Below are positions 2,908-43,400 of a stretch of 64,000 nucleotides of DNA, in pieces (position 1 is the first letter of the stretch; each line of letters starts with the position of its first letter). The notes below the pieces were generated by a model, which was not told the DNA's origin, made no database searches, and saw only the letters and a list, made by a program, of their open reading frames with translations. A program made the position numbers and the translations under genes. The stretch is taken from positions 62,001 to 126,000 of the IMG/VR virus record IMGVR_UViG_3300017917_000952, one strand, 5' to 3'.

Positions 2908-5178
2908 ATGTTGGAACCGGATAAAGACTTAGAGAAAATTTTTGAACATGCTGTTCAACTAGCAAGTATGAACAAACACGAATACGTTACGCTAGAACAT
3001 TTTCTTTTTAGCATGTTAAGTAACGAACCGTTCGTGAAAGTATTAGAGGCATTTGGTACAGATGTAAAAACCTTTAGAGAAGACATCGAAAACTACATTG
3101 TCAACGAACTAAAAGACATTGCTAGTGAAACTGTTACTCGCCCTAAGAAAACAGTAAGTGTAGATCGAATGTTGAATCGTGCATTTACGCAGGTTCTGTT
3201 TAGCGGTCGTCAAATTATTAGCCCTGTTGACTGCTTTATTAGCCTATTCGGCGAAAAGAAAAGCCAGGCAAACTATTTCATAAGGAAAGCCAATATTGAT
3301 AAAGATATTTTCATCGACTTTATCAAGAAAGAAGTCTCTAAGAACGAAGAGGTAGAAGAAACCAAAGGTAGCAATCCTCAGATCGAAAGAATGTTGCTAC
3401 AGTTCTGCACTAACTTGAGCGCAAAGGCTAAGAGTAAAAAAATTGATCCGGTTATCGGTCGTGATAAAGAAATTGAAGAAATTCAATTAGTGCTTGCACG
3501 CCGTACAAAATCAAATGCTATTATGATCGGAGATCCCGGAGTAGGTAAGACCGCTATTGCAGAAGGTCTTGCTCGTAAGATCTACGAAGGCAATGTTCCT
3601 AAGTTTATTCAAGAGCACACAGTTTATAGTCTAGATATCAGCGGTATGCTAGCCGGTAGTAAATACCGCGGTGATTTTGAAGAACGCCTCAAGGCCGTTA
3701 TTAGTGCATTAGAGAAAAAAGGCAAGTGCATCTTGTTTATCGACGAAGCACATATGATGAATGGTGCAGGCGCTGCCGGTAACAGTAGCAATGATATGGC
3801 TAATATGCTCAAGAGCACACTAGGCAAAGGCACAATTAAGGTAATTGCTTCAACTACTTGGGACGAATATCGTAAACACTTCGAAAAAGATCGTGCGCTA
3901 ATGCGCCGATTCCAGCGTGTGGTAATTGACGAGCCCGATGAAGTAACTGCTATTAAGATTATTAAAGGTCTTAAGAAGTATTACGAAAAACATCACAGCG
4001 TTAAGATTACAAATCAAGCAGTTATTGATAGTGTCAAGTATAGTGTTAAGTATCTCAGTGATAAGAAATTACCTGACAAGGCTATCGACCTAATTGATTG
4101 TGCAAGTGCTCGCTTTAAACTTCGCAATGAAGAAGGCGGTATTGTTGACCACGATGAAATTCTATTCGAAGTTAGTCGTATTGCTAACATTCCGATTGAA
4201 GCCATTAACAGCAAAGAAACAAGTAACTTGCCTAATCTTGAAAAGAACATGAAGGCCAAGGTGTTTGGTCAAGAAACTGCTATTGATAATCTGTTAGACA
4301 AAGTGTTTATTGCACAGGCTGGCCTAAAAAATCCCAATAAGCCTGTAGGTAACTTCTTGTTTGTTGGCCCAACTGGTGTCGGTAAAACAGAAGCGGCAAA
4401 ACAACTAGCACAGAACCTAGGTATCAAATTAGTTCGCTTTGATATGAGTGAATATCAAGAACAGCATAGTGTTGCTAAATTCATCGGTGCGCCTCCAGGC
4501 TATGTAGGCTACGAGGATAACGCAGGATTGCTGATCACAAGTCTACAAGAAACACCAAACTGTGTGCTGTTGTTAGACGAAGTTGAAAAAGCACACCCAA
4601 GTGTGTTAACCGTTCTCCTACAAGTTATGGATAACGGCTTTGTTACAGGCAGCAATGGTAAGAAAGCAGATGCTCGCAATGCAATTATCATTATGACTTC
4701 TAACCTTGGTGCTGCCGATGCTGAAAAGAATGCAGTCGGTTTTGGTAGCCTAGAACGTGATAGCGATCCTAAAGATGCAATCAATAGGTTCTTTGCACCG
4801 GAATTCCGAAATCGTTTAGACGGTATCATTAGATTTGGCAAACTCGATCAGCAGACAATGATCAAGGTGGTGAAGAAATTTGTTGATGAACTTAATGCTC
4901 AGATTAAGGACAAAAATATTCATGTCAAACCAACTGTTGAAGCAGTTGAGTACTTGATCGAAAAAGGCTTTGATAGTAAAATGGGAGCTCGTCCGCTACA
5001 GAGATGCATTGATGAGATGATCAAGCGTCCCCTAAGTAAAGAGATTCTGTTTGGTAAACTATCAAATGGAGGCATTGTAGAAATCACAGTTGAAGATAAA
5101 TCTCTTAAACTCAATGTAGTAGACATTATGCCTATTAAAAAGAGCGAAGATGAAATTCAGGAAACTGACAACGCATAA
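2908..5178 (+). CDS. clpA: ClpA-type Clp protease ATP-binding subunit
   Basis: Clp N-domain (TLEHFL), two AAA+ modules (GDPGVGKT/FIDEAH; GPTGVGKT/LLDEVEKAH), no coiled-coil M domain, VGF ClpP-docking loop, MGARPL. Confidence 0.93.
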   Translation: MLEPDKDLEKIFEHAVQLASMNKHEYVTLEHFLFSMLSNEPFVKVLEAFGTDVKTFREDIENYIVNELKDIASETVTRPKKTVSVDRMLNRAFTQVLFSGRQIISPVDCFISLFGEKKSQANYFIRKANIDKDIFIDFIKKEVSKNEEVEETKGSNPQIERMLLQFCTNLSAKAKSKKIDPVIGRDKEIEEIQLVLARRTKSNAIMIGDPGVGKTAIAEGLARKIYEGNVPKFIQEHTVYSLDISGMLAGSKYRGDFEERLKAVISALEKKGKCILFIDEAHMMNGAGAAGNSSNDMANMLKSTLGKGTIKVIASTTWDEYRKHFEKDRALMRRFQRVVIDEPDEVTAIKIIKGLKKYYEKHHSVKITNQAVIDSVKYSVKYLSDKKLPDKAIDLIDCASARFKLRNEEGGIVDHDEILFEVSRIANIPIEAINSKETSNLPNLEKNMKAKVFGQETAIDNLLDKVFIAQAGLKNPNKPVGNFLFVGPTGVGKTEAAKQLAQNLGIKLVRFDMSEYQEQHSVAKFIGAPPGYVGYEDNAGLLITSLQETPNCVLLLDEVEKAHPSVLTVLLQVMDNGFVTGSNGKKADARNAIIIMTSNLGAADAEKNAVGFGSLERDSDPKDAINRFFAPEFRNRLDGIIRFGKLDQQTMIKVVKKFVDELNAQIKDKNIHVKPTVEAVEYLIEKGFDSKMGARPLQRCIDEMIKRPLSKEILFGKLSNGGIVEITVEDKSLKLNVVDIMPIKKSEDEIQETDNA

Positions 5179-11692: not shown

Positions 11693-13119
11693 CAAACGAA
11701 TTCAAAGTAAAAAAATATAAAGACGCAACTGTCTATACTTTAGAAAGTGCATCTGCTGGTGCTACTGGTGCAGGCGCAATTGCAACAGCATCGAGCAGTA
11801 TCGGAGGCGTTCGTCGTAGAGATAATCTAATTGCCCAAGAGAGCGATACTATTAAAGTACCAGTTACACAAAAGCCTCGCCAAGGACCTTTGCGTCCTCA
11901 AACTGGTGCTGGACAACATCGTGACAAAAAGAAAGAACAAAAGCAAGGCAAAGAAAAGCATCGTAAACCATACATGGAAGAATTAAAAACTCGCCTAGCC
12001 GCTTTAAAAAATAAACTAGGCGAAAACAGCGAGCTTGCACAACAGATGATGGCTCTTGCAAGGTCTAGAGGAATGAATCCTCGAATTGCCGGTACTCCGG
12101 AACAAGAGCGCGAACGCACACAACAAATGATGGCGCAACGTGCAAAAGATAGAGAAGAAAAAGATCGACAATCTGCAAGCGATGATGCTGCTAAATTACC
12201 AGAACTAAAAGCAGAATACGATGCACTGTTTAAAAAGTATAATAGTCTAGGTGGCAGAAACTGGCAGTATGCCGACCGTGAGCAGAATTTGTCAGATAGC
12301 GAACGTGAAGCACGTAGCATAGAGCCAAAATTAAATCAATTGGCTGGTAGAATTGCTCGTGCAGAAAAATCACAAGGTGTAGCAGAAGGCGCAGAGTTCG
12401 GTGCTTACTATAGCGAACAAGTTGCACAACAAATTTTTAACAAGCGTCAGGATATCACATCTGAAGACGAAGTATTGAATCAAGCATACCACATTGTGGC
12501 CGACGAGCAAGGACAAAGACGTGCTCGTTATATGTTTAACTACGATGAAGACTTCCCAAGTGATGTTGTATCTAATTACTTCCATTTACAGAAGCAAGGT
12601 GTAGCAGAAGGTGATGCATATTTTACACATTTAGAAAACATGCTCAACGAAGATTGGCAAAAAGTTAATCGTCGAGATAAGACAGATGGCATGAGCCGAA
12701 AGGCAGTTAAGGCCTACCGTCGAGAGAATCCCGGTAGCAAATTAAAGACCGCTGTAACTACAAAGCCTAGCAAACTAAAGAAAGGAGGCAAGGCTGCAAA
12801 GCGCCGCAAGAGTTTCTGTGCTCGCATGAAGGGCATGAAGAAAGCCCATGCCAGTGCTAAGACTAAGCGCAACCCGGATAGTCCAATTAATAAGGCCTTA
12901 CGCCGTTGGAACTGCGAGGAAGATGCATACATGAACAGTCTAAACCAACAGGTCCTTGAGAAATTAAATCCTCAAGCAGATGTAGACGTATGGGTGCAGG
13001 ATTTTCAAAAAGCAGATCCTAACAAGTACAAACAATTTAAAAATAAAACTCCTCAGAAAAAAGCGCAGATGGCGGTAGCAGCACACTATGCCGCTAACGA
13101 ACCAAGTAAGAAAAAATGA
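11689..13119 (+). CDS. Modular protein with QGVAEG repeats and a basic RRKSFCARM...ALRRWNC module
   Basis: ORF track 11674-13119; probable start MTNEFK at 11689; repeated QGVAEG. Confidence 0.7.
   Translation: MTNEFKVKKYKDATVYTLESASAGATGAGAIATASSSIGGVRRRDNLIAQESDTIKVPVTQKPRQGPLRPQTGAGQHRDKKKEQKQGKEKHRKPYMEELKTRLAALKNKLGENSELAQQMMALARSRGMNPRIAGTPEQERERTQQMMAQRAKDREEKDRQSASDDAAKLPELKAEYDALFKKYNSLGGRNWQYADREQNLSDSEREARSIEPKLNQLAGRIARAEKSQGVAEGAEFGAYYSEQVAQQIFNKRQDITSEDEVLNQAYHIVADEQGQRRARYMFNYDEDFPSDVVSNYFHLQKQGVAEGDAYFTHLENMLNEDWQKVNRRDKTDGMSRKAVKAYRRENPGSKLKTAVTTKPSKLKKGGKAAKRRKSFCARMKGMKKAHASAKTKRNPDSPINKALRRWNCEEDAYMNSLNQQVLEKLNPQADVDVWVQDFQKADPNKYKQFKNKTPQKKAQMAVAAHYAANEPSKKK
12373..12611 (+). 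repeat. 17-nt direct repeat CAAGGTGTAGCAGAAGG flanking an in-frame 222-nt module
   Basis: Copies at 12373-12389 and 12595-12611; 12-nt core GGTGTAGCAGAA also at 9569-9580. Confidence 0.8.
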
Positions 13120-13622
13120 GATTCGTTGAGTTCAAAGCAAGCGATTATGAAATACATGATCGTCCGAAACTGGATAAGATCTTGCTAGAACTCTGTCACC
13201 ATATTTTGGAAGGTCAGCGTATTGATTCAAACAAATACGGGATGGTTGCGGCCTGTGTCTTAGACCCCGAAAACCGCAAAGTCTACGGTGTTAACGAGGC
13301 GGCCGGAGACAATAAAAGACGCCACGCAGAACGTGTGGCCATAGATAGATATGAGGAAAACTATGGCCAAGTACCAAAAGGCAGTATTATCATTACAACC
13401 CTAAGTCCTTGTAATGAAGACCATACTGAAATGGCCGATGGTAGATACGGTGAGAGTTGTACAGATCTAGTAAACTCGTCAAACTGTCGCAAGGTCTATT
13501 GCGGATATATAGATCCAACGCAGCACAACGACCACGAAGAATATACCTTAGAAGAAACACAAGAAGGTAAAATCAAAGAACTCTGCAAACGATTCGCAGA
13601 CACTTTTCTGAACGCAAAATAA
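13116..13622 (+). CDS. Zn-dependent cytidine/dCMP deaminase-fold protein
   Basis: HAE...TLSPC-x15-C...VYCG; 'GMVAACVLD' first strand. Confidence 0.8.
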   Translation: MRFVEFKASDYEIHDRPKLDKILLELCHHILEGQRIDSNKYGMVAACVLDPENRKVYGVNEAAGDNKRRHAERVAIDRYEENYGQVPKGSIIITTLSPCNEDHTEMADGRYGESCTDLVNSSNCRKVYCGYIDPTQHNDHEEYTLEETQEGKIKELCKRFADTFLNAK

Positions 13623-13623
13623 T

Positions 13624-13652
13624 TTGACTTCAACACTTGCGTACTATATACT
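13624..13652 (+). promoter_or_regulatory. sigma70-like promoter
   Basis: TTGACT-N17-TATACT, then AAGGAGA SD. Confidence 0.75.
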
Positions 13653-13672
13653 ATAGGACAAGGAGAATTACT

Positions 13673-13942
13673 ATGGGTAAAGCATTTGGTGCTCCAGAGC
13701 AAGCCAAAATTAAACAAATCGTAGCCGAAGGCTGCACAGTTATGCAAGAGATTCAAGATCTAACAGAAGGTCTAAATGAAACTATCAAAGCCGTGGCAGA
13801 AGAACTAGAAGTAAAACCTAGTATCATCAAAAAAGCAATTCGTATTGCAATGAAAGATCAATGGGATCAAGTGTTCCGTGAGTTCGACGATCTTGAAACT
13901 ATCGTTGACATCAGTGGTCATGCAAATCGTCGTGAAGACTAA
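13673..13942 (+). CDS. Small helical dsDNA-binding protein (T4 DsbA-like)
   Basis: Start MGKAFG at 13673 after AGGAG; size and pattern (AEELEVKPSIIKKAIRIAMK) resemble T4 DsbA. Confidence 0.5.
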   Translation: MGKAFGAPEQAKIKQIVAEGCTVMQEIQDLTEGLNETIKAVAEELEVKPSIIKKAIRIAMKDQWDQVFREFDDLETIVDISGHANRRED

Positions 13943-14241
13943 TGGACCAAATTACTAATACAATCTCTAACATTTATAATTGGGCAAAAGGCGATTATAA
14001 AGAGTGGCCTGCTCGATTTGTGTTAGAGATTACAGCGTGGTTGATGAGCCTAGGCTGCTCAATAGTTTTAGCAACTAGTGCCACCGATCCGCTGTTCTAT
14101 TGGTTGTATCCTATTTTTATTACCCAATGCGCTATCTTCGGGTGGGCGTCTTGGACTCGTAAAAGTACGGGCATGGTAGCAAATTATATTTTGTTAGTCA
14201 CAATAGATCTTGTTGGTTATATTAGACTACTAAGTAGTTAA
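13942..14241 (+). CDS. Small membrane protein
   Basis: Three hydrophobic segments. Confidence 0.65.
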   Translation: MDQITNTISNIYNWAKGDYKEWPARFVLEITAWLMSLGCSIVLATSATDPLFYWLYPIFITQCAIFGWASWTRKSTGMVANYILLVTIDLVGYIRLLSS

Positions 14242-14252
14242 GAGTAAGGTTA

Positions 14253-14299
14253 GATCAGCCACAAATGATCATGTTGGTATGTGTCAGCCTCAAATGACA
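14253..14299 (+). promoter_or_regulatory. Twin 5-bp-stem/8-nt-loop hairpins upstream of DNA polymerase SD (putative translational operator)
   Basis: GATCA-GCCACAAA-TGATC (14253-14270) and TGTCA-GCCTCAAA-TGACA (14282-14299), then AGGAG (14301-14305). Confidence 0.6.
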
Positions 14300-14312
14300 T
14301 AGGAGAAAATTA

Positions 14313-16985
14313 ATGAGTTACGTTGATGCCATATGGGATCGCGAGAAAGACATCATTCATGCTGTCGAGCGAGATCTTAAAAAGGGTAGACTTTATCAAA
14401 CATTCCCAGCCCGCTATCTGTTTTACTATCCAGATGCTAAGGGCAAATATAAATCAATCCACGGCGAAAGCCTATCAAAAGTTACTGCAAAGAATTGGAA
14501 AGAGTTCATTAAAGAACAAAAGATCCATAGCGGTTACAAACTATACGAAAGCGACATCAACCCTGTATTTCGCTGTCTCGAAGAAAACTATCTAGGTAAG
14601 GAACCTCCAAAACTGAATGTAGCGTTTTGGGATATTGAGGTGGACTTCGATCCAGAGCGCGGCTATGCATCGCCCGATGATGCATTTATGCCAATCACTG
14701 CGATTGCCGTTCACCTACAATGGTTAGATACATTAGTCTGTCTTGCTATTCCTCCAAAGACTCTAACAATGGAGCAGGCACAAGAACAGGTTAAAGACTT
14801 TCCTAACACGTTTCTGTTCGAAACAGAATACGAAATGTTAGACACTTTTCTTAACCTAATTGAGGATGCCGACATTCTAAGCGGCTGGAACAGTGAAGGT
14901 TTCGATATGCCGTACACGGTAAATAGAATTATAAAGGTTCTAAGTAAAGAAGATACACGCAGACTGTGCCTTTGGAACCAAATGCCCAAGAAGCGGGAGT
15001 ACGAAAAATATGGAAAAGCGGCTGTTACTTATGACCTGGTTGGTCGTGTTCATTTGGACAGTCTCGAGCTGTACCGCAAATACACATATGAAGAGCGTCA
15101 CACCTACAGACTGGACGCAATTGGGGAAATGGAGATAGGTGAATCAAAGACTGTCTATGAAGGCACACTTGATCAACTATACAATAATGATTTCCGCAAG
15201 TTTATTGAATACAACAGGCAAGACTGTGCGCTGTTAAACAAACTTGATAAGAAATTAAAATTCATTGACCTTGCAAACACCATTGCACATGAAAACACTG
15301 TGTTGCTACAGACTACAATGGGCGCTGTTGCTGTTACGGAACAGGCTATTGTAAATGAAGCACATCACAGAGGACTAATCGTTCCAAGTCGTCCACGTAG
15401 AGATGATACAGTTAATAGTGCGGCTGCTGGTGCGTATGTTGCATATCCTAAAAAAGGACTTCACGACTGGATTGGCTCTATGGACATTAACAGTCTGTAT
15501 CCATCTGTCATTCGTGCATTGAACATGGGTCCAGAAACTATTGTCGGACAGTTAAGGCCAGATTATACTAAAGCAGAAATTGAAGAAAAAACAACTGCTA
15601 AGGGATTAAGTTTTGCCGGCTCATGGGAAGGCAAGTTCGGTAGTAACGAATATGAATTTGTTATGGCACAGGACAAAGCCCACGATATTATCATTGACTG
15701 GGAGAATGGTAGCACTGATGTAATGAGTGGTGCCGAAATTTATAAACTAATATTCGAAAGCGGCAAGCCTTGGATGATAAGTGCGAACGGCACAATCTTT
15801 ACACATGAGCACGAAGGAGTTATTCCCGGATTGCTAAAGCGTTGGTACGCTGAACGTAAAGAAATGCAGGCCAAACTTAAAGAGGCAATTAAGGCCGAAA
15901 ATAAAATCGAAGAAGAATATTGGGACAAGCGTCAGTTGGTTAAAAAGATTAACTTAAACAGTCTGTACGGCGCTATTCTTAATGTGGGCTGTAGATTCTT
16001 TGATGATAGAATCGGACAATCAACTACATTAACAGGACGACAAATTGCACGTCATATGGCTGCAAAAATTAATGAAGTTGTAACAGGCGAGTATGATCAC
16101 GTAGGTAAAGCAATTATCTACGGTGATACAGACTCTGCTTATTTCAGCGCCTATAGCAGTCTTAAAAATGAAATTGCAAAAGGACAAATCCCTTGGGACA
16201 AAGATACCGTTATACAACTATATGACACTGTAGCCAACGAAGTTAACAGCACATTCCCGCAGTTCATGCTCGATGCTTTCCACTGCCCAAAGAGCCGTGG
16301 CGAAGTTATCAAAGCAGGTCGAGAAATTGTTGCTATCAAGGGTCTGTTTATTACTAAGAAACGTTATGCAGTTCTTGTATATGACAAAGAAGGTAAGCGT
16401 AAAGATAAAGACGGCAAGCCGGGAGAAATCAAGGCTATGGGTCTAGATCTGAAGCGTAGCGACACACCTGAATTTATGCAGGAATTCCTAACTGAGATCC
16501 TAACAAAGGTCCTAAATGGCAGCGAAGAAAAAGAAATTCTAGATAGAATTGTCGAGTTCAGAACCGAATTTAAGGCTCGACCTGGTTGGGAGAAAGGTAG
16601 TCCAAAACGTGCAAACAATATTACAGACTACGAGGAAAAAGAAAAGAAAGCAGGCAAGGCAAATATGCCCGGTCATGTCCGAGCAAGTATTAATTGGAAT
16701 ACTCTCCGCAGAATGAACGGTGACAAATACAGTATGCAAATTGTCGACGGTATGAAGGTTATCGTCTGCAAGTTAAAGTCCAATCCTCTAGGATTTACCA
16801 GTGTTGCATATCCTGTAGATGAACTACGTTTACCTAAGTGGTTTATGGAACTGCCGTTTGATCACGGAGAAATGGAAGCCACCATTATTAACAACAAGGT
16901 TGAAAACCTTATTGGTGTACTGGAATGGGATTTGAACAGTACACAAGAAACAAACACATTTGGTAGTTTATTCAGTTTTGAATAA
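14313..16985 (+). CDS. gp43: Family B DNA polymerase (T4 gp43-like)
   Basis: Exo DIEVD, WNSEGFD, YNRQD; Pol DINSLYPS, KKINLNSLYG, YGDTDS, KKRYA. Confidence 0.96.
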   Translation: MSYVDAIWDREKDIIHAVERDLKKGRLYQTFPARYLFYYPDAKGKYKSIHGESLSKVTAKNWKEFIKEQKIHSGYKLYESDINPVFRCLEENYLGKEPPKLNVAFWDIEVDFDPERGYASPDDAFMPITAIAVHLQWLDTLVCLAIPPKTLTMEQAQEQVKDFPNTFLFETEYEMLDTFLNLIEDADILSGWNSEGFDMPYTVNRIIKVLSKEDTRRLCLWNQMPKKREYEKYGKAAVTYDLVGRVHLDSLELYRKYTYEERHTYRLDAIGEMEIGESKTVYEGTLDQLYNNDFRKFIEYNRQDCALLNKLDKKLKFIDLANTIAHENTVLLQTTMGAVAVTEQAIVNEAHHRGLIVPSRPRRDDTVNSAAAGAYVAYPKKGLHDWIGSMDINSLYPSVIRALNMGPETIVGQLRPDYTKAEIEEKTTAKGLSFAGSWEGKFGSNEYEFVMAQDKAHDIIIDWENGSTDVMSGAEIYKLIFESGKPWMISANGTIFTHEHEGVIPGLLKRWYAERKEMQAKLKEAIKAENKIEEEYWDKRQLVKKINLNSLYGAILNVGCRFFDDRIGQSTTLTGRQIARHMAAKINEVVTGEYDHVGKAIIYGDTDSAYFSAYSSLKNEIAKGQIPWDKDTVIQLYDTVANEVNSTFPQFMLDAFHCPKSRGEVIKAGREIVAIKGLFITKKRYAVLVYDKEGKRKDKDGKPGEIKAMGLDLKRSDTPEFMQEFLTEILTKVLNGSEEKEILDRIVEFRTEFKARPGWEKGSPKRANNITDYEEKEKKAGKANMPGHVRASINWNTLRRMNGDKYSMQIVDGMKVIVCKLKSNPLGFTSVAYPVDELRLPKWFMELPFDHGEMEATIINNKVENLIGVLEWDLNSTQETNTFGSLFSFE

Positions 16986-28647: not shown

Positions 28648-29730
28648 ATGGCAGAGCAAATTTCCACCAGCCGAACTGTTACTCCTAACGAAGCAAAGCG
28701 AGCTCTTCGTAAGTGTATCAAAATTCAACGCCCTGTGTTTATGTGGGGTCCTCCGGGTATTGGTAAGTCCGATATCGTCAAGCAAATCGGCGAAGAATAC
28801 GAACGCGAAGTTGTCGACGTTCGACTCAGTCTTTGGGAACCTACTGATATCAAAGGTATCCCTTATTACAACGGCCAGGCCAATACTATGAGCTGGGCTC
28901 CTCCTGCAGAACTGCCTACCGACGAAGACAGCACTGCTATTCTGTTCCTTGACGAACTGAATTCTGCGGCTCCTGCTACTCAAGCGGCTGCTTATCAACT
29001 TATCCTGAATCGCCGTGTTGGTACTTATGTACTGCCCAAAGGTGTTTCAATTGTTGCCGCCGGTAACCGTGAAACTGACAAGGGTGTTACTTATCGTATG
29101 CCTGCTCCGCTGGCTAACCGTTTTGTTCACATTGAACTTAAAACGGATTACGAAGACTGGCTCCAATGGGCTACTATCAATCGTGTTCACGAACAAGTGG
29201 TTGGTTACGTTGGCTTTGCCAAGCAAGACCTTTACGACTTCGATCCTAAGTCTGCAAGCCGGGCATTCGCTACTCCTCGTTCTTGGTCCTTTGTTAGCGA
29301 ACTTCTGCAAGACGACGACCTGCCCGAGAACACTCTGACTGATCTAGTCGCTGGTGCTATCGGCGAAGGTCTTGCTGTTAAGTTCATGGCTCACCGTAAG
29401 GTTGCCAAGCAGATGCCTAAGCCCGAAGACATTCTGGCAGGCAAGGTCAAGAAGTGTGACATCAAAGAAATCTCTGCGATGTATTCGCTAACTGTTTCTA
29501 TGTGCTACGAACTCCAAACTGCACATGAGAAGAAAGTAAAAGACTGGGATTCGATGGCAGACAACTTCTTCGGCTTCATGATGGATAACTTCCCGACTGA
29601 ATTGGTTGTTATGGGTGCAAAGGTTGCGTTGACTAACTATCAACTGCCGTTTGATGCTTCCAAACTGACAAACTTCGATCGCTTCCACGACAAGTACGGT
29701 AAGTTCATTATCACTGCAATGGAAGGTTAA
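28648..29730 (+). CDS. MoxR-like AAA+ ATPase
   Basis: GPPGIGKS, LFLDELN, AAGN, ANRF, TPRSW. Confidence 0.88.
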   Translation: MAEQISTSRTVTPNEAKRALRKCIKIQRPVFMWGPPGIGKSDIVKQIGEEYEREVVDVRLSLWEPTDIKGIPYYNGQANTMSWAPPAELPTDEDSTAILFLDELNSAAPATQAAAYQLILNRRVGTYVLPKGVSIVAAGNRETDKGVTYRMPAPLANRFVHIELKTDYEDWLQWATINRVHEQVVGYVGFAKQDLYDFDPKSASRAFATPRSWSFVSELLQDDDLPENTLTDLVAGAIGEGLAVKFMAHRKVAKQMPKPEDILAGKVKKCDIKEISAMYSLTVSMCYELQTAHEKKVKDWDSMADNFFGFMMDNFPTELVVMGAKVALTNYQLPFDASKLTNFDRFHDKYGKFIITAMEG

Positions 29731-29734
29731 AATT

Positions 29735-29756
29735 GGGCCCTCCGGGGCCCTTTTTT
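29735..29756 (+). terminator. Rho-independent terminator
   Basis: GGGCCC-TCCG-GGGCCC followed by TTTTTT. Confidence 0.8.
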
Positions 29757-29758
29757 AC

Positions 29759-29787
29759 TTGCATTTTTTCTTTTTTGAGTGTATAAT
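29759..29787 (+). promoter_or_regulatory. sigma70-like promoter
   Basis: TTGCAT-N17-TATAAT; AGGAG SD downstream. Confidence 0.7.
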
Positions 29788-29818
29788 AGATATATACAGT
29801 TAAACACAGGAGCACTTA

Positions 29819-31087
29819 ATGTCTGCAAAAAACTCCACTGCCAGCAAACAAAAGCCTATCCAAAAGCAAGAATTTACACAGGATCAAAAAAACAAAATTG
29901 TTGAAAAACTGATCACTGCTCGTATCGGTCTTCTGCTTCGTCATCCGTTTTTCGGTAACTTGGCTACACGACTCAAACTTGTAGATGCTACCGATTGGTG
30001 TGGTACTTTGGCTACCGACGGTCGCCATTTCTATTACAATAATGACTTCGTTAACGCACTGACTCCAAAAGAATGTGAGTTTGGTTTTGCACACGAAGTT
30101 CTACATAATGTGTTCGATCACATGGGTCGGCGCGAAAGTCGAGATCCTCAATTGAGTAACATTGCCGCTGACTATGCGGCTAACCAAATCCTCAAAGATG
30201 AACGCATTGGTGAGGTTCCTAGTTTCATTAAGATCTTCCAAGATAACAAATATCGCGGTTGGTCTTATGAACAGATCTACGAAGAAATTGAAAAGAACGC
30301 AATCAAAATTGATCTTAGCCAACTCGGCGAACTGCTTGACGAACACCTCGACGGCGATGAAGGCGAAGGTGACGGTGACGGTGACGAGGACGGTAAAGAA
30401 GGTAAGGGCAAGCGTCCTAAGTTGACTCCCGAAGAGAAGAAACAGATTCGCGACGAGATTAAGGAAGCGATGGTTGCGGCGGCCCAAAGTGCTGGTGCAG
30501 GTAAGGTGCCTGCAGGTATTCAACGTATGATCCAATCCTTTACTGAGCCTAAAATGGATTGGCGCCAAATGTTGCGTATGAACATCCAAAGTATCTTCAA
30601 GAGCAACTTTAGTTTCAGTCGTCCTAACCGTAAGAGCCAACACTGCGGCGCTATTCTTCCTGGTATGATGAACGAAGAAACTATCGATGTTAGTGTTTGT
30701 ATTGACATGAGCGGTTCTATCAGCGACACAATGGCCCGTGACTTCTTGAGCGAAGTTAAAGGTATCATGGAAGAATACAAAGACTTTAAACTAGATCTGT
30801 GGTGCTTTGATACTGACATCTATAACTATCAGAAGTTCACTGGCGACACTGCCGACGACATTAATCAATATGAGTGCCAAGGCGGTGGCGGAACTGACTT
30901 CGATGTTAACTTCCAGTTCATGAAAGACAACGATATTCAGCCCAAGAAGTTTATCATGTTTACAGACGGCTACCCTTGCGGTAGTTGGGGTGACGAAGAT
31001 TACTGCGACACGCTGTTCATCGTCCACGGCAACAAAGAAATCGTTGCACCGTTTGGTCAGACAGCATACTACGAACTCGGAAAATGA
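29819..31087 (+). CDS. HExxH metallopeptidase-like + VWA domain protein (DUF2201-like)
   Basis: HEVLH; acidic linker; MIDAS DMSGS; GGGTDF; FTDG. Confidence 0.85.
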   Translation: MSAKNSTASKQKPIQKQEFTQDQKNKIVEKLITARIGLLLRHPFFGNLATRLKLVDATDWCGTLATDGRHFYYNNDFVNALTPKECEFGFAHEVLHNVFDHMGRRESRDPQLSNIAADYAANQILKDERIGEVPSFIKIFQDNKYRGWSYEQIYEEIEKNAIKIDLSQLGELLDEHLDGDEGEGDGDGDEDGKEGKGKRPKLTPEEKKQIRDEIKEAMVAAAQSAGAGKVPAGIQRMIQSFTEPKMDWRQMLRMNIQSIFKSNFSFSRPNRKSQHCGAILPGMMNEETIDVSVCIDMSGSISDTMARDFLSEVKGIMEEYKDFKLDLWCFDTDIYNYQKFTGDTADDINQYECQGGGGTDFDVNFQFMKDNDIQPKKFIMFTDGYPCGSWGDEDYCDTLFIVHGNKEIVAPFGQTAYYELGK

Positions 31088-36258: not shown

Positions 36259-37491
36259 TTAAAAATCTGCTGCTAGAATCCGTTTCCAGGTATTTGGAGC
36301 AACACAGATGTAGAAATAAGTGGCATCAAACGCCATTTGTCCGGTTACACCAGTTGATGTAGAGCTCGGAGGAACGGAGGTGAACCCTTGATATGCTGTA
36401 GTTTGCACAGTACTATCCACAAAAGATATTCTGCCATTACTAATTGTTACAGGGTTTGCAAAATTAGAATCGTTGAATATGTGAACATCACTAGAATATC
36501 TGCTAAACTCGGGGCTAGATACAAAGGATCTAATAGGAATTGCATCTGTTGCAGTCGAACAGGTTCTTACATAGAACATAGAACCGTGAACTGGAGGGGT
36601 ATAATCCGATGTTGCGTCAAAGCCCATTCCACCAACTTCTTCACCGAAGTTAATAGTGTTAGGTGCAGTTGTGGCTCTTACTGTGAATACTGCGATATCG
36701 TCGCCGTTTTTAAGAGGTTGACGGAGACCCGGTGCGGGGCTATACCTAGAAGTAATGAACATAAAAGCATTAGTTCCAGTTACAGTACTGTTTATAGGAG
36801 CGGTGTCTTTACTAGTTATACCAGGTTGGTGCAATCTAGTAGTCGAGAAAAACAAGTCTGCTCTGCCAGGGCCAACAAAGGATGCTAAACCATTGGTGCT
36901 TGTGGTAACTACAAGAGGATTAGAGTTTGCTGCTCCTAACCTAATTACAGTAACTGCCTGAGATGACGAAGATGTAGCAGTACTTAAAACTGTAAAAGCA
37001 TTAATTCTTGTAGAATTTGATAATTGTGTGTTGATAGGTTGATGGAATATAGTAACACCAGCGCCTGCGGCTGTAGTTCTATTTCCACTAAACTTCCAAT
37101 CTTCATTAGCAATAGCAGTAATACCAACAGAAGCAAGACCGTTTCCAATTAAGGTATTGTTGTTACCGTCATACCCGCCAAATCTAACAGACCCAATAAA
37201 ATCGCCCGAACGGATCGCTCCGCCGTCAGTATTTCGGTAATTACTTTGCAGGCCATGAAGTGGTTCAGTATCTCCCGTACTTGAAGCGCTGTCTTGCAGA
37301 GTTACGCTTTGAAATGTAACATTGGAATAACTATACAGATCTTGATTAGTTCTGCCAAAATTTGATTTTTTAAGTTGTTCTACAAGATCATTGTATTGAA
37401 ATCTACGTGCGAGACCATTATCAGTCATGATAAAGTATCCATTAGTCTCGCTAGATGTTGTAATTGTCTGCAATAAATTTATATTTGGCAT
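36259..37491 (-). CDS. Tail fibre/adhesin-like protein
   Basis: Thr/Ser/Gly-rich beta protein ending P.SST..G..GQMAFDATYFYICVAPNTWKR. Confidence 0.6.
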   Translation of the reverse strand: MPNINLLQTITTSSETNGYFIMTDNGLARRFQYNDLVEQLKKSNFGRTNQDLYSYSNVTFQSVTLQDSASSTGDTEPLHGLQSNYRNTDGGAIRSGDFIGSVRFGGYDGNNNTLIGNGLASVGITAIANEDWKFSGNRTTAAGAGVTIFHQPINTQLSNSTRINAFTVLSTATSSSSQAVTVIRLGAANSNPLVVTTSTNGLASFVGPGRADLFFSTTRLHQPGITSKDTAPINSTVTGTNAFMFITSRYSPAPGLRQPLKNGDDIAVFTVRATTAPNTINFGEEVGGMGFDATSDYTPPVHGSMFYVRTCSTATDAIPIRSFVSSPEFSRYSSDVHIFNDSNFANPVTISNGRISFVDSTVQTTAYQGFTSVPPSSTSTGVTGQMAFDATYFYICVAPNTWKRILAADF

Positions 37492-40400
37492 TATGTATTT
37501 CCTGTCAATGTTACGCCGTTTTCATCAGTTAAAGGTCGAGCTCTTTCATCTAATAGAACTTCTTCGTTATTAGCATAAAGTTCAACAGGAAGTACAGTCT
37601 TCGATTCTTTTAAGAAATTAGAAATCGCTGTTGTACTATCCCACAGCGATAGTGTAGTTCCTGTTCCCACAACTGTATTAAAGTCATCACTTCTGCTAAA
37701 CTTTTTAACGATCGTAAGTTCTATATTGTCTTCAACTTCTATATTTAAGTAAATTTTCTGTATAGAACCATCAATAACAATAGAATAATCAGGTACAAGT
37801 CTAGTTAATCCGGAGTAAACCCAACCAGGTACTGTTAAATTATCGGTTCTAGTTCTCGTAAATGTCCATACTTTGCCAGAAGAATTATCTATATACGAGT
37901 CTCCTTTACTTGCATTGATGCTGTTTAGATCCGATATTTGCTCTACTGTGCCTTTTATCGAATCAATTGAAACTTGATCTAACATCACTGAAGTGTCATG
38001 ACTAAATTGAAGAGCCTTTCTTAACTGATGTCCACCTAGGTATACTTCGACTTGGTCGTTTAGACTAATAGATTCATCAAGTACTATTCCCTGAGAACTA
38101 ACTGTTGCGGTAGTATTTGGAATAGAAACATCGTGGTCAAACTTCTTAATTTCGTAGAAGACAGAACCGTCTGTATAATTTAATTGTATATCAGTTCTTT
38201 CGGAAGTTTCAAACTCTTGTTCATACCCTTGATCTATTACTTTAACACCGGCATCTAACGCAGGGTTAATGCCTGTTCCCAAAGTTCCCCTTGTAAGTTG
38301 TCCTAATGTGTTTCCGTTCATTTGGTAGAACTCAATTCTTTCGTAATTAATTAAAATTACGCCCGGTTTGTTCTCGTCCACAATAGGTGCTGTTAATACA
38401 GATGCATCGTTGACATGAATCTCTGTATCAGTCGGTAATAGAGGTTGTGTAAGGTATGTTGAATGTTCTTCACTTATTCTAGTAAAGGTAGTATTTCCTA
38501 ATATATCCTTAAACATTCTATATCCAAGAACATTGCCCGAGTACATAGGATCTGTAAAACTAATAACTTCAATTGTATCAGTAGTATTAATTGTCCATTC
38601 GTCACTAATTTGTATTGTTAGATTATCTTCTAAGATGATAAAGTCTTGTCCGTTAGTCAATGTCTTAGTAGTTCCGTCTGGGCCAATAATAGAGACCCAC
38701 ATGTAATTGACATTGCTTACTGGTTGTGTCATTACAAAACGTCTATCGGGGTTGCCCGTAAACTCTTCTTCTGTAACTCCAAGAGATCCGGTATTATCAA
38801 CAAAGGTAATTACACGAACTGCGTCGCCTACGTTTAAAATACCAGGATTGATAGTTACTGTGGTTCCGATAATTGTATATTGACCGTCAATAAGGCGCTC
38901 AGTTCTACCACCTTGTAGCAATTCAACAATATGAACTCCTACTGCATTTAACGTAAAGGTTGATGTTGTACTGATCTGTTCTACAATTTTATTAAAATTA
39001 GAACTAGGTTCTGTGAAGAACCATACCTGAATTGTGTTAAACTGATTCTCATCTAGATCAGTAACGGTAACTAGTGCATAACCAGATGCGCCTGCTGACA
39101 CATCGAGGCTAATATTATCTGTATACTCGCCGTTAACTGTTACATAAACATCTTGCACAACGCCGGCAAGAATTTCACTCTGAATAGTTGCACTGGTACA
39201 ACTGTTAACTACGTTTACTACATGATCAATTGCACCAACATCTGCAGATCCCCCACCGACTCCTATTAGACTATATTCTAATAATCCAGATTCAGTTTGT
39301 GGAGGAATCAACAACTTAGAGTTAATCCAGTCTATACCAAACTCGTATTCGAATAATTCTAATGTAGAGGTGGTATACTGTAGTATGTTATTGTTTAAAA
39401 TAACAGATATGCTATCGTTTGACGCCGGCAGCATTGGTAAACTATATGCTTGAACTGCACTTGATGTCGATACTTCAAAATTACCATTGATAATTGTAGG
39501 AGATAACGATGGTCCTACAGTGTAGACATTTACACCTAGTGCATCAATAATAAATCCAGGTAACATTTCTGAAGGAGCATGGCCCGAGAAGGTATTAATA
39601 AATCCTACCTCACCAGTAATAATGATGTCTTCTGGGTTTAGTCCTAGTGCTGTATTCTTTTCTCCGTTTAACCATGTGCCGCCAGACAGATATGTGTCAG
39701 GAGTTAGACCACCATACGGATTAGAGAATCCGGGTCCTTCGTATGCTCCGCCAACGGTTAGGCCAGGGAACTCAATCCCTTCGACTAATGCATTTAGATC
39801 TAGTCCTACTACACCGTAAGTAGATGTATAGTATGCAAGAACTCTTTCGGTGCCATTAAGAACATTAGCATTCTTTCTATACTTGACGGTTACGACATTG
39901 CCTGCGGGCATCGGCTCTTGATCAAAGAAGTTTAATGTAGCAAACTTTTTATGGAATCCGTTGTATATTCTTTCTGTATATTCAACATTCCACTCACTGC
40001 CCAAGGCAATAATTCCGTTTACTTTTACAACAATGCCTGTTTTATCAAACGCAGGAACCCAACTTAGGTCAAAAGTTCGCTCGATACCGTCTGTTACAAA
40101 AGTATCTAACACTTCAAAGTCTCCTACCTGATTGTTGAAACTTGTTCTATCAAATTTTAATTCAATAGATGCAGTTCTATCAAGTTCAGACACATCACTG
40201 TTAGAATAACTCATTACGCCCGAATCAACGCTAAAGGAGTTAAACAACGGAGTAGGAACCGGAGTAACTGGTTGTTGTTCGATTTCGGTAACGGTATACT
40301 TTGTAATAAAGTTTCTAATTTGCGTGTGATAAGGCTTGACTTCCTTTACATAGTCTTCGTAGTAAGAACTGTCCTGCATCTTATAAACAGGCGGCTGATC

Positions 40401-43400
40401 TAGTTCACCTAATGTATGTGTTAGGCTAATAAACGATGTCTTGAATGCCCAGTCTAGGATCTTTTGCTCAGACATTGCATATTTGACTGCCTTGAAGAAC
40501 ATTAGATTCCAGTTTGACTTTAGTTCATAGATGAATAAGTCATTTTTTAGTGCAGCAAATATGTACTCTAGTTCAATATCAGGACGCTGATCCCACAATG
40601 TTTGATCCCATGTGTTCTTAAAGTCCCAGTTTAGAGGGTTGTCTTTAATTCTCCATAGACTATCCTTGAATTGAATAGTACCGTTTTGTTTGTAAACAAG
40701 GTCATACCCATCACCGTATGTACCGTACACGCCAGGGGCAGTCTTCTTTAATACAATAAAGTTTCCATCACCACCGTTGTTAACTTTTACATATTGATCC
40801 TGTTGTAACTCAAGGCCTTCTAATTCATAAGGACTTCCTACAACGGACGAATAGATCTGGAATTGATTATACTCGGAACTTGCATAGTCAACATAATCCC
40901 AGTACAGAGATGTGTTAAAGCTCTGTGTCTTTGCCCTGTTCCAGATACCTAAGACATAATCCCATTCGTAACGAGTCCATTTTCCATTATAGGTATCGTC
41001 ACTTTGTACAATAACAGTCTGTGGTCTTGCAATTAATCTAAAGTTTGCGCCGAATCTCTTACCAGCATTTACAATAGTTGCTTGAACAATGCTTCCAGTT
41101 TCATCAACACGGGTTGTAATTTTTAATCCTTCTGCAAAGGTATTAGGCTCATCTCGTGTAATAAATCTAGTTCTGTTGCCGTCAAAGGTAGTTGCGTTAC
41201 TATCAAAAGTTGTAATGTATTTTGCATCATCAACAGTGAAGGTAGGCCCTTCGTAGCCGATAACAGTACCTGTAGAGTTGTATACTGGGTTTAATTTTCC
41301 GTAACCAAATCCAGGATTAGCAATAACGATGTTATCAACTTCGCCATTATTGTTAATTGAGCAATTTAAAATTGCTCTTTCAAATCCAGTTGTATCAATA
41401 GATTCTAATGTAGTGTTATCTTCAACTAGGAAGTCGTATGTATTTTCGAACTGGCTAGGAATTTCTTCTTGAGCGTTCAAGTTCTTGAAACTATAATACC
41501 CGTTAACTGGTTGAGAAATTAATACTTCATTTGCAAATTCGATAATATTTCTAAGTGCAGAGAACCTATCAGCAAACATTGTCTGTTGAGGTCTTACTCC
41601 AATACCGTAACGAGTCCTTAACGACAGGCTAGGATCAGGAACTAGATTACCTAGTTTATCTCTACCTAACAGGCTGTCAATCATCTTTTTCTCTAACTGT
41701 GCAGGAGGCATCTTAGTAGAACTGCCCTCTTCTAAGATGTACCATTGGGTATGACGAGGTGTCTGTACTACTTCAGTAGAATTATTTTGTGCAATATTGA
41801 TACTAATCTTGCTATCAACTGGTAGGTTGCCTAGATTGCTCAACATTACTGCATGAGAATCAATTATTGCAGCAAAAGAAAGTCCATATGCTTTTGGATC
41901 AGCAATAACAGTTGCAATATCATAACTACTTAATCTTCTATTTTTTGTATTTGGCTTAACTGTTTTGTTCTTAACCCAGTAGTAATAGATATTTGTGAAA
42001 CTGTTTGTCACAGGATCATATACCTGTTTAACACTGATAACACTGTTATCAACAAATCTAGGTTGACCGCTAATGCCCTTTGCAAGGCCTGCGGCTGTAT
42101 CGGCTTCAATCGCCCACTCGCTTGGTAGTAAAGGTGTGCTTACCCATTCGTAAACATCAATAGTTGCGCCCGGGAATAGTTTACCCCAATTGTTCTTCCT
42201 ATATTCTAATTCGCCTTGTTCATACCATTGGTACTTAGCGGTGCTTAGATCCCACCATAGTTCGCCAACATGCTCGTCTAACCAGTTCTTATTGGTGTCA
42301 ACGTTCACACCTTGAACACCGATGCTATAGATAGCAGGATCGCTCATTAATTTGTAAGATAATTCCTGCTCTGCAATTCCTGGAATTCTACCCTTCAAAG
42401 GATCAAAAATATCAAGATAGTTGATAACCTGATCTTTTTCGGTGTCAATTAATGCAATTCTGTTAATTGTGCTAATGTCAACAAAGGTATCTTGTTTAAC
42501 AATTTGTTTAAGACTATTAACAGTTTCATCTTTCTTCTTGAATTCAATAAATCCAGGCTTTAGTGAAACGTTGTCTTCGCAAGGAACGCCGACAAAGATC
42601 GACGGTCCGTCGATCAACGCCACTTTACCAAAGTTGTTTCCAGGATTTCTTGCAACAAAGGTGTTAAGTAGTTCTTGTGTGAACACAAATCTCGATGTCT
42701 TTCTAAAGTAGACATAGACTGCACCAGTGCCCGCTTCAGTACTCTTAATAGTTGTAATGCCGCCGTCTAAAGTAAACAGACCTTTATCAAATGTGGTTGC
42801 TAAAGTAGAGTTAATACCTGTTGCAGAAATTACTACTGTCTTATTGTCAGTGTCAATATCGACAGAAGTTCCGAACTTTAGTACAGATCCAGGAACTGGG
42901 TTTTCAACTATTTGATCCATTACGAATGAACCATTTAGATTCCTGTATACTATAACTTTTCCGAAAGATCCGTTTTCATTTTCAATCTGAGAATTTGAAA
43001 CAAGAATATAGTTGCCGTCGGCACTGACCTTAACAGAAGTATTTTCAAGACGCAACGTCTGTGTTTTTACAAGAGACTTGTTGTAGATCTCTACTACATT
43101 ACCTGCACCGATAGCAATAACTGAAGCGTCATCGGAACCAGAAATGCCTGTTATAGTATTAGCAGAAGTAACTTTAATCTTAAAGGCTGTTGCAATATTG
43201 CCAGCATTTTCTTTAACTTCGTATGCATATACCGCAGTATCGGCACCGATTAAAGTTAATTTATTTGTTGCATTTCTTTCAACAAATAAATGCTTACCGA
43301 AGTTAGTTACTGTACCGATATCCGGATTTGTAATAAATGTCGATACTCCCTCAATTAGATATTGAGAATTAATCGAACTTACTTTTACTACACCAACATT

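What the first reader, a model, noticed from the sequence alone, without database searches (positions are those of the whole stretch)
14253..14315. Twin near-identical hairpins abutting the DNA polymerase Shine-Dalgarno: duplicated gp43-type autogenous operator
Seen: GATCA-GCCACAAA-TGATC and TGTCA-GCCTCAAA-TGACA. The stems differ but both pair perfectly, which looks like covariation. The 8-nt loops differ by one base, and the second hairpin ends 1 nt before AGGAG. Known: T4 gp43 represses its own translation by binding a 5-bp-stem/8-nt-loop hairpin just upstream of its SD. Inference: this is an analogous operator with a new loop sequence (GCCWCAAA) and tandem duplication.
Basis: partly seen in the sequence, partly recalled or inferred. 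Interest (0 to 1): 0.7.

Follow-up and report, generated by a model that had tools for sequence, protein, structure and literature searches.

The report
Conserved RNA operator before phage polymerase
The two small hairpins in front of this freshwater jumbo phage's DNA polymerase gene are a real, strongly conserved folded RNA element (each hairpin probably a tiny pseudoknot) sitting against the ribosome-binding site; it most likely lets a protein, plausibly the polymerase itself, shut off the polymerase's own translation, though no binding partner has been shown.

Summary
HP1 (14253-14270) and HP2 (14282-14299, extendable to 14280-14301) lie in the 71-nt gap before a gp43-like family B DNA polymerase (14313-16985). 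The same two-hairpin leader occurs exactly once per locus in 95 related uncultured phage loci. The core stem pairs are almost never broken, with 26-43 double substitutions per pair. Ten leader positions are invariant, while none of 102 fourfold-degenerate sites in the adjacent gene is. G·U pairs place the structure on the + strand RNA.

New here: a conserved RGY triplet 5' of each stem covaries with loop bases 1-3 (GGU·GCC, GGC·GCC, GGU·ACC, AGU·GCU; about 210 units, no mismatch), so each unit is probably a mini H-type pseudoknot. A sister clade keeps only the SD-proximal unit, so the tandem form is derived.

The element is unique to the polymerase leader in six large contigs, has no Rfam match and is not homologous to the T4 gene 43 operator. 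Best reading: a translational operator, probably autogenous. The ligand is inferred, not shown.

The parts
14231..14236 (+). TAAGTA, at the position of a TAAATA box that starts 9-10 nt upstream of the element in 66 of 84 distinct related leaders. Candidate -10-like promoter element, with one mismatch in the window.
   Evidence: position-fixed box, conserved even inside different upstream C-terminal codons; one search gives only a weak sigma-70-like match nearby. Inferred, not shown.
14239..14241 (+). TAA stop of the upstream 99-aa ORF (13942-14241, probable small membrane protein, no family match). The element begins immediately after it.
14248..14250 (+). Unit 1 5' triplet GGT, proposed to pair with loop bases GCC 14258-14260 (pseudoknot helix of unit 1)
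   Evidence: 98.4% of cells paired; pair 9-23 is GC 76 / AU 4; pair 13-21 is UG 68 / CG 9 / UA 3; no mismatching combination in 81 distinct leaders
14253..14270 (+). HP1: stem GATCA/TGATC (5 bp), loop GCCACAAA (14258-14265)
   Evidence: -3.7 kcal/mol; core pairs 0 unpaired of 82, with 33-37 double changes per pair; loop C2, A4, A6, A7 invariant
14271..14275 (+). Spacer. The core-to-core distance between the two stems is held at 12-14 nt in all 81 distinct leaders although the sequence varies.
14276..14278 (+). Unit 2 5' triplet GGT, proposed to pair with loop bases GCC 14287-14289
   Evidence: proximal-unit states are GGT.GCC, GGC.GCC, GGT.ACC, and in the sister clade AGT.GCT (39) and AGC.GCT (1); all of them pair
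14280..14301 (+). HP2: core stem TGTCA/TGACA (14282-14286 / 14295-14299), extendable to 7 bp; loop GCCTCAAA (14287-14294). The 3' strand of the extended stem includes A14301, the first base of the SD.
   Evidence: -6.4 kcal/mol; core pairs at most 1 unpaired of 82; 25 G.U at one pair; loop C2, C3, A6, A7 invariant
14301..14305 (+). Shine-Dalgarno AGGAG
   Evidence: across 81 leaders the SD core starts 0-6 nt (mode 2) after the HP2 core stem, and in 38 of 81 the extended stem touches or overlaps it
14313..16985 (+). Family B (gp43-like) DNA polymerase gene, 890 aa, the regulated gene

Best explanation
The 14246-14305 stretch is a cis-acting structured RNA in the leader of the DNA polymerase mRNA. 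It consists of two tandem units. Each unit is a 4-7 bp stem closing an 8-nt loop of form RCY-NN-AA-R, and the first three loop bases pair with an RGY triplet 1-5 nt 5' of the stem. That makes a compact H-type pseudoknot in which the invariant AA lies in the loop segment crossing the short helix. The promoter-distal unit is a clade-specific duplicate. The SD-proximal unit is the ancestral core and abuts or overlaps the Shine-Dalgarno sequence. The most likely function is a translational operator: a protein recognises the folded unit or units, and by sitting on the SD-proximal one (and stabilising its extended stem) it keeps the 30S subunit off the SD. The most likely ligand is the polymerase itself, when it is in excess over primer-template DNA, as in T4, RB69 and RB49. 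Shown: the structure, its conservation, its strand, its position and its specificity to the polymerase. Inferred: the translational mechanism (from position, weak intrinsic stability and coupling of inserted ORFs). Inferred by analogy only: the identity of the ligand. Rough partition: structured functional RNA 0.97; acts on translation initiation 0.75; needs a protein ligand 0.65; ligand is the polymerase 0.45. The confidence given for this explanation (0.45) is for the full statement, including the polymerase as ligand.
For: Structure: both stems covary. The core pairs are unbroken in 82 distinct leaders, apart from a single cell in HP2, with 26-43 double substitutions per pair, and controls collapse. 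G.U pairs (25 at one position) fit only the + strand. Selection: ten invariant leader positions, against 0 invariant among 102 fourfold-degenerate sites in the adjacent gene. Pseudoknot: all of about 210 unit instances show pairing-compatible triplet/loop states. The G-C to A-U double change appears in at least 3 places on the polymerase tree for the distal unit. It switches at least twice, including a nested reversal, for the proximal unit. Position: the SD starts 0-6 nt after the HP2 core, and the hairpin spacing is fixed at 12-14 nt. Weak stability: isolated hairpins average -4.3 and -5.1 kcal/mol, which points to recognition rather than a roadblock. Specificity: one copy per genome in the own 206-kb record and five related contigs of 106-230 kb, and no RegA homolog. 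Linkage: the element stays with the polymerase while upstream neighbours vary. In five loci from two clades, a small ORF lies between the element and the polymerase, and its stop always overlaps the polymerase ATG, which preserves control by translational coupling. Precedent: the enzyme's nearest solved relatives are RB69/T4 gp43, which repress their own translation through an 18- or 16-nt hairpin plus RBS-overlapping sequence (PMC3014915; T4 sequence).
Against: There is no binding or expression evidence of any kind. The complex predictor would not fold protein-RNA, and no RNA-seq run was listed. The element is not homologous to the T4 operator. The T4 operator is a single hairpin with a free loop and no pseudoknot, so the analogy is functional only. 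Some T4-related polymerases do not autoregulate. The element is patchy: relatives with 50-66% identical polymerases often lack it altogether, so it is dispensable. In L077 and the L200 group the polymerase has its own GGAG inside the inserted ORF, so direct occlusion of the polymerase SD is not obligatory there. The held genome is only about 58% complete, so a second copy elsewhere cannot be excluded.
Confidence: 0.45

Rival explanations
1. It is a translational operator, but the ligand is another phage or host RNA-binding protein rather than the polymerase, for example a dedicated small repressor encoded elsewhere in the jumbo genome.
For: All the structural, positional and conservation evidence fits any protein ligand equally well. 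The fixed 12-14 nt spacing of two similar units would suit a dimer or a two-domain protein better than a monomeric polymerase. About 42% of the genome is not held.
Against: The unit is found only at the polymerase gene in six large contigs. A dedicated trans-regulator with a single target is less economical than autoregulation. No RegA-family gene is present. Neither flanking small ORF nor the inserted Cys-rich ORF has a recognisable RNA-binding family, and neither is a constant neighbour.
Confidence: 0.2
2. It is a protein-independent structural element. The compact pseudoknots at or near the 5' end of the polymerase mRNA protect the transcript from 5'-end-dependent decay and/or set a fixed, moderate initiation rate at the adjacent SD.
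For: A position-fixed TAAATA box 9-10 nt upstream in clade 1, and TATAAT just upstream of the distal hairpin in the sister clade, suggest the element is 5'-terminal on the mRNA. The distal position can be filled by a quite different covarying hairpin in the sister clade, as expected for a generic 5' stem-loop. The invariant AA could be purely tertiary contacts within the pseudoknot.
Against: A generic stabiliser would not need invariant loop bases, a specific pseudoknot, fixed spacing and tight juxtaposition to the SD. It also would not be restricted to one gene per genome. The hairpins are weak.
Confidence: 0.18
3. It is a tandem small-molecule riboswitch of the small H-type pseudoknot kind (as in preQ1-I, SAM-II/V, SAM/SAH), sensing a replication-related metabolite and gating polymerase translation.
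For: The size, the pseudoknot topology, the adjacency to the SD and the tandem arrangement resemble small pseudoknot riboswitches. In many leaders the extended HP2 stem competes with the pseudoknot triplet for the same bases, which gives a possible two-state switch.
Against: No Rfam family matches even at E up to 10. Each unit has only four invariant bases, two of them unpaired (the loop AA), and the connecting loop L1 varies in length (1-5 nt) and sequence, which leaves little to build a ligand pocket. Its distribution is one gene in one phage lineage, unlike riboswitch classes. The pseudoknot helix uses the 5' flank, not the SD.
Confidence: 0.07
4. It is a DNA-level signal (a palindromic operator for a dimeric DNA-binding protein, a hairpin promoter or an origin element) rather than an RNA.
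For: Each hairpin is an inverted repeat in DNA, and a promoter-like box lies just upstream.
Against: G.U pairs are frequent (25 of 82 at one pair, plus U.G in the outer pairs and the pseudoknot helix), and they would be C.A mismatches on the other strand. The conserved bases lie in the asymmetric loop, not in the arms, and the arm sequences are free to vary provided they pair. The 5' triplet-loop covariation has no duplex-DNA interpretation.
Confidence: 0.03

Closest known systems
T4 / RB69 / RB49 gene 43 autogenous translational operator
   Same: It lies in the leader of a gp43-family family B DNA polymerase gene, next to the RBS. The hairpin geometry is the same: a 5-bp stem plus an 8-nt loop, 18 nt in all, read from T4 as AGCCU-AAUAACUC-GGGCU. 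The intrinsic stability is similarly weak. An AA dinucleotide in the 3' half of the loop is essential in T4/RB49 (PMC3014915) and invariant here. It is specific to one gene.
   Different: There is no sequence or model homology. There are two tandem units instead of one. The loop is GCCNNAAR rather than AAUAACUC. Loop bases 1-3 appear to be paired into a pseudoknot, whereas none is reported for the T4 operator. The proximal hairpin abuts the SD, whereas the T4 hairpin ends 7 nt before its SD. Binding by the polymerase is untested.
T4 gene 32 autogenous operator (5' pseudoknot plus unstructured region)
   Same: It is a phage replication-protein mRNA whose leader carries an H-type pseudoknot that serves as the recognition site for autogenous translational repression (PMC3014915).
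   Different: It controls a different gene and protein. The gene 32 pseudoknot lies far upstream and nucleates cooperative coating of an A/U-rich region. Here the pseudoknot units are tiny (a 3-bp second helix), tandem, and directly against the SD.
Ribosomal-protein leaders with two sites or pseudoknots (E. coli L20, S15)
   Same: They are gene-specific autogenous operators. In L20, two binding sites (one a pseudoknot, one a stem-loop) precede the RBS (PMC1888825, abstract). In S15, a pseudoknot alternates with a double-hairpin form (PMC3985624, abstract). This resembles the competition seen here between the extended HP2 stem and the pseudoknot triplet.
   Different: The proteins and RNAs are unrelated. 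Those operators mimic rRNA sites, and no such mimicry is known or tested here.
Small H-type pseudoknot riboswitches (preQ1-I, SAM-II/V, SAM/SAH)
   Same: They are hairpin-plus-flank pseudoknots under 40 nt, adjacent to an SD, and sometimes tandem.
   Different: There is no Rfam match. The pseudoknot helix here uses the 5' flank and does not contain the SD. There are very few invariant unpaired bases. The distribution is one gene in one lineage.

Membership tests
T4-type gp43 autogenous translational operator | Lies in the 5' leader of a gp43-family DNA polymerase gene, adjacent to or overlapping its ribosome-binding site | tested here: met
   the ORF is family B and nearest to RB69/T4 gp43. 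HP2 ends 1 nt before AGGAG, and across 81 leaders the SD starts 0-6 nt after the HP2 core.
T4-type gp43 autogenous translational operator | Single hairpin of about 16-18 nt (5-bp stem, 8-nt loop in T4) | tested here: inconclusive
   The geometry of each hairpin matches. However, there are two units here, and the loop's first three bases covary with a 5' triplet, giving a pseudoknot, which is not a feature of the T4 operator.
T4-type gp43 autogenous translational operator | Loop core -UAAC- (T4, RB69) or -UAAA- (RB49), with the 3' AC/AA critical | tested here: inconclusive
   AA at loop positions 6-7 is invariant, and HP1 loops read A-U/C-A-A-A. The register differs from T4 (positions 3-6), and the rest of the loop is unrelated.
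T4-type gp43 autogenous translational operator | Common descent or alignability with the T4/RB69 operator | tested here: not met
   the covariance model finds nothing at the T4 gene 43 leader; intermediate relatives (PA5oct, and polymerases 50-59% identical) have unrelated leaders, so the element arose within this lineage.
T4-type gp43 autogenous translational operator | Specific binding by the cognate polymerase, and polymerase-dependent translational repression | not testable with these tools
   the complex tool does not fold protein-RNA; no RNA runs were listed.
RegA-type translational regulon | Many target mRNAs with unstructured A/U-rich sites, and a RegA gene in the genome | tested here: not met
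   There is one site per genome, the site is structured, and there is no PF01818 match in the held 206 kb.
Known Rfam RNA families, including pseudoknot riboswitches | Match to a curated covariance model | tested here: not met
   no family matches the leader even at E up to 10 in 13000-15500.
Intrinsic transcription terminator | G+C-rich stem followed by a U-run | tested here: not met
   no T-run follows either hairpin. The stems are weak and often A/U-rich.

The most novel reading that the evidence does not exclude
The units are ligand-sensing aptamers: a new class of very small tandem pseudoknot riboswitch that couples translation of a phage replicative DNA polymerase to a replication-related metabolite, by toggling between the pseudoknot and an extended stem that occludes the SD.
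Probability: 0.07. Interest if true: 0.85.

Novelty: new variant of a known kind. Interest (0 to 1): 0.62.

Why it matters
Autogenous translational control of a replicative DNA polymerase is known experimentally only from T4 and its close relatives. Its comparative support is unusually clean, including natural compensatory mutants for a 3-bp pseudoknot helix.

If the polymerase is the ligand, translational self-limitation of family B polymerases would be a recurrent solution reached with different RNA folds. It would also offer a compact new protein-RNA pair for structural work, since no gp43-RNA complex structure exists. If the polymerase is not the ligand, the element is still a new RNA family for Rfam, with a defined and testable architecture.

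Tried and rejected
1. Chance or repeat family. The exact motif search in the window is not significant on its own, so relatives were needed. They settle the question.
2. Regulon. A structural regex over the own 206-kb record gave 10 loose hits against 6.9 +/- 3.3 expected. The only one that also has the 5' triplet lies inside an SDR epimerase-like coding region.
3. Model searches of five related large contigs gave one strong hit each. A weak extra hit (L088, E = 0.005) lies inside small ORFs and breaks the invariant AA.
4. RegA homolog: none.
5. Rfam: nothing.
6. Terminator or sigma-70 promoter inside the gap: nothing of note.
7. Cultured relatives: PA5oct-like phages match only within the polymerase gene, at about 64% nt identity. 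The one leader read, PA5oct itself, is an ordinary terminator plus SD.
8. Protein-RNA complex prediction: not folded by the tool, so it gives no evidence either way.
9. RNA-seq evidence for 5' ends: no RNA run was listed. Only DNA metagenomes hold the sequence.
10. Leader peptide. The window has a 10-codon ORF starting at the ATG at 14264, but GCGA-stem variants lack that ATG, so it is not conserved.
11. The Cys-rich inserted ORF as a trans-factor: no PHROG family and no copy in the held genome.
12. Petrov and Karam 2002 (PMC137073) is not held. The T4 facts come from the review and from the T4 sequence itself.
Full report
**What is in the window.** Positions 14253-14270 read GATCA-GCCACAAA-TGATC. 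Positions 14282-14299 read TGTCA-GCCTCAAA-TGACA. These are followed by T, AGGAG (14301-14305) and ATG at 14313.

HP2 can extend to 7 bp (14280-14301) and then includes the first base of the SD. The ORF 14313-16985 is a family B DNA polymerase. Its nearest solved relatives are RB69 and T4 gp43 at E about 1e-60, far ahead of archaeal PolB at about 1e-25.

The gene sits at the end of a same-strand array: a dCMP deaminase (13116-13622) and two small ORFs, the last ending at 14241. The window is part of a 206,751-base viral record judged 58% complete, so this is a jumbo phage. The sequence is held by pond, freshwater and estuary metagenomes.

**Is it more than chance?** From the window alone, no. 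The exact motif occurs twice against 0.92 expected, and 23 of 100 shuffles do as well. The 96-nt fold has z = -0.39. The evidence comes from relatives.

I fetched 80 at 81-90% amino-acid identity and about 15 more. Nearly all have both hairpins in front of the polymerase start, with different stem sequences and the same loops.

On a MAFFT alignment of 67 distinct leaders, the four core pairs of each stem are almost never broken (a single cell). They carry 26-37 double substitutions each, apart from the loop-closing A-U of HP1 and a G-C/G.U pair of HP2, which vary little. Paired cells are 91%, against 28-46% when the 3' partners are slid by 1-3 columns. None of 500 column shuffles reaches the observed covariation score. 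RNAalifold predicts the same two stems on its own.

A covariance model built from this alignment finds exactly one hit of 54-89 bits in each of 95 loci across 722 kb, and nothing else.

As a neutral yardstick, I examined 102 fourfold-degenerate sites under invariant amino acids in the adjacent polymerase gene. None is invariant across the 81 sequences, and the mean majority-base frequency is 0.56. By contrast, ten leader positions are invariant in all 82 distinct leaders, including loop C2, A4, A6, A7 of HP1 and C2, C3, A6, A7 of HP2.

G.U pairs are common (25 of 82 at one HP2 pair). The structure therefore belongs to the + strand, meaning the mRNA, and not to duplex DNA.

**A third helix: each unit is probably a pseudoknot.** Each stem is preceded, 1-5 nt upstream, by a conserved RGY triplet, and each loop begins with RCY. 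In 81 distinct clade-1 leaders the combinations are as follows:

| Unit | GGT.GCC | GGC.GCC | AGT.GCT | GGT.ACC |
|---|---|---|---|---|
| HP1 (distal) | 64 | 10 | 4 | 3 |
| HP2 (proximal) | 76 | 3 | 0 | 2 |

All of these can pair, and the mismatching combinations never occur. Counted formally on the model-fitted alignment, this helix is 98.4% paired.

On the polymerase tree the AGT.GCT double change sits in three separate places.

A sister set of 80 loci, found with a 62%-identical polymerase, gave an independent test. Of 69 distinct leaders, 46 passed the scan for a single SD-proximal unit, four more carry it displaced upstream, and two have imperfect copies. The states of the 46 are AGT.GCT 39, AGC.GCT 1, GGT.GCC 3, GGC.GCC 2 and GGT.ACC 1 (two rows corrected by eye as noted in the call discussion). 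On their tree the joint state switches at least twice, including a reversal nested inside the A.U clade.

About 210 unit instances and roughly five apparent co-switches show no broken intermediate. That is good, though not conclusive, evidence, because recombination of leader modules could reduce the number of independent events.

The geometry is that of a compact H-type pseudoknot:
- The triplet and the loop's RCY form a 3-bp helix.
- A 1-5 nt connector follows.
- The 4-7 bp stem stacks directly on the 3-bp helix.
- The remaining five loop bases (NN-AA-R, with the invariant AA) cross the short helix.

**Distribution and history.** The element does not reach the cultured relatives. PA5oct has a plain terminator and SD. 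Leaders of polymerases 50-60% identical are unrelated, or there is no gap at all. At 62% identity, L171 has one unit and L172 has a good proximal unit and a degenerate distal one.

In the sister clade the distal position holds a different covarying hairpin flanked by YCG...CATG, often just downstream of TATAAT.

The element has been lost repeatedly. In those cases the upstream membrane-protein ORF (a homolog of window 13942-14241) ends 4-12 nt before the polymerase ATG.

**Specificity.** A structural scan of the own 206-kb record gives 10 loose matches against 6.9 +/- 3.3 expected. The only one that also has the triplet lies inside a conserved coding motif. The model finds one copy in the own record and one in each of five related contigs of 106-230 kb. 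A weak extra hit lies inside small ORFs and breaks the invariant AA. There is no RegA homolog and no Rfam match.

**Mechanism.** Four features suggest a folded RNA that something reads in order to control initiation at the adjacent SD:
- The SD core starts 0-6 nt (mode 2) after the HP2 core stem.
- The extended HP2 stem touches or overlaps the SD in 38 of 81 leaders.
- The two stems are held 12-14 nt apart.
- The isolated hairpins are weak, averaging -4.3 and -5.1 kcal/mol.

In five loci from two clades (L077; L200, L202, L214, L225) a small Cys-rich ORF lies between the element and the polymerase. In every case its stop overlaps the polymerase ATG. The element stays at the head of the unit, and the polymerase stays coupled to whatever the element controls.

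The upstream neighbours vary, but the element always travels with the polymerase. This argues for a polymerase-specific translational operator.

The ligand is not shown. The polymerase is the most economical candidate because there is only one target, the enzyme belongs to the gp43 branch, and T4, RB69 and RB49 gp43 do exactly this (PMC3014915). I put this at about 0.45. Another protein gets about 0.2, a protein-independent 5' structure about 0.18, a riboswitch about 0.07 and a DNA-level signal about 0.03.

**Comparison with T4.** Read from the T4 genome, the gene 43 operator is AGCCU-AAUAACUC-GGGCU, followed 7 nt later by AAGGA. Stem length, loop length and stability are the same as here. An AA in the 3' half of the loop matters in T4 and RB49.

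Everything else differs. There is no model match, the loop sequence is unrelated, there are two units, there is a probable pseudoknot, and the proximal unit abuts the SD. It works like a gp43 operator by position and geometry, but it is not a member of that RNA family.

**Verdict.** The element is a new, very well supported structured RNA family of a known functional kind, and a concrete experiment would decide the ligand.

Noticed in passing
window 14231-14236 (TAAGTA); related loci, 9-10 nt upstream of the element: A TAAATA box sits at a fixed offset upstream of the element in 66 of 84 distinct clade-1 leaders. It is conserved at nucleotide level even where it lies in the last codons of different upstream ORFs. 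It is a candidate -10-like phage promoter element, which would put the operator at the 5' end of the polymerase mRNA. TAAATA occurs only 110 times on both strands of the 206-kb record.
   Followed up: partly
L077:2879-3004; L200, L202, L225 (about 195 nt) and L214 (about 173 nt) upstream of the polymerase start: A small Cys-rich ORF (CxxC...CxxxC, with an acidic ...IRGE-like tail; 41 aa in L077) is inserted between the operator and the polymerase in five loci from two clades. Its stop always overlaps the polymerase ATG (ATGA). There is no PHROG family and no copy in the held part of the window's genome.
   Followed up: partly
L175-L254 (sister clade), about 40-75 nt upstream of the polymerase start: The distal position is occupied by a different covarying hairpin (stems GCCC/GGGC, GCTC/GAGC, GCCG/CGGC, GTGGG/CCCAC and others, with variable loops). 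It is flanked by conserved YCG and CATG-N-AGAGT, and often sits directly downstream of TATAAT, so it may be a 5'-terminal mRNA stem-loop.
   Followed up: no
L171, L172, L173 (relatives at 60-62% polymerase identity): Polymerase genes of relatives carry inteins (PF14890 in L171 and L173) or are split into two ORFs (L172). The single or degenerate operator persists in front of the first piece in L171 and L172.
   Followed up: no
L167:300-400: A polymerase 59% identical has an unrelated single hairpin (CCACT-CTGCTAT-AGTGG) about 35 nt upstream of its start, at a T4-like distance. It could be an analogous but different operator in another lineage. This is a single sequence, so no covariation test was possible.
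   Followed up: no
L088:1501-1546 (contig of L001): An HP2-like hairpin (TAGTAG-GCCGTGAA-TTACTA) directly precedes AGGAAAATACG-ATG of a 52-aa ORF and lies inside an overlapping 71-aa ORF. The model E-value is 0.005, but the loop breaks the invariant AA. It was judged to be chance.
   Followed up: partly
window 14264-14296: The window's leader contains a 10-codon ORF (ATG in the HP1 loop/stem to TGA in the HP2 3' arm). It is absent in GCGA-stem variants, so it is not a conserved leader peptide.
   Followed up: yes
window 37491-49352 (-), 2908-5178 (+), 28648-31087 (+): The window also encodes a 3953-aa ORF on the minus strand flanked by further very large ORFs (1145, 757 and 1136 aa), a ClpB-like double AAA+ protein, and a MoxR-like AAA plus a VWA/DUF2201 metallopeptidase pair. 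No tRNA genes are present.
   Followed up: no
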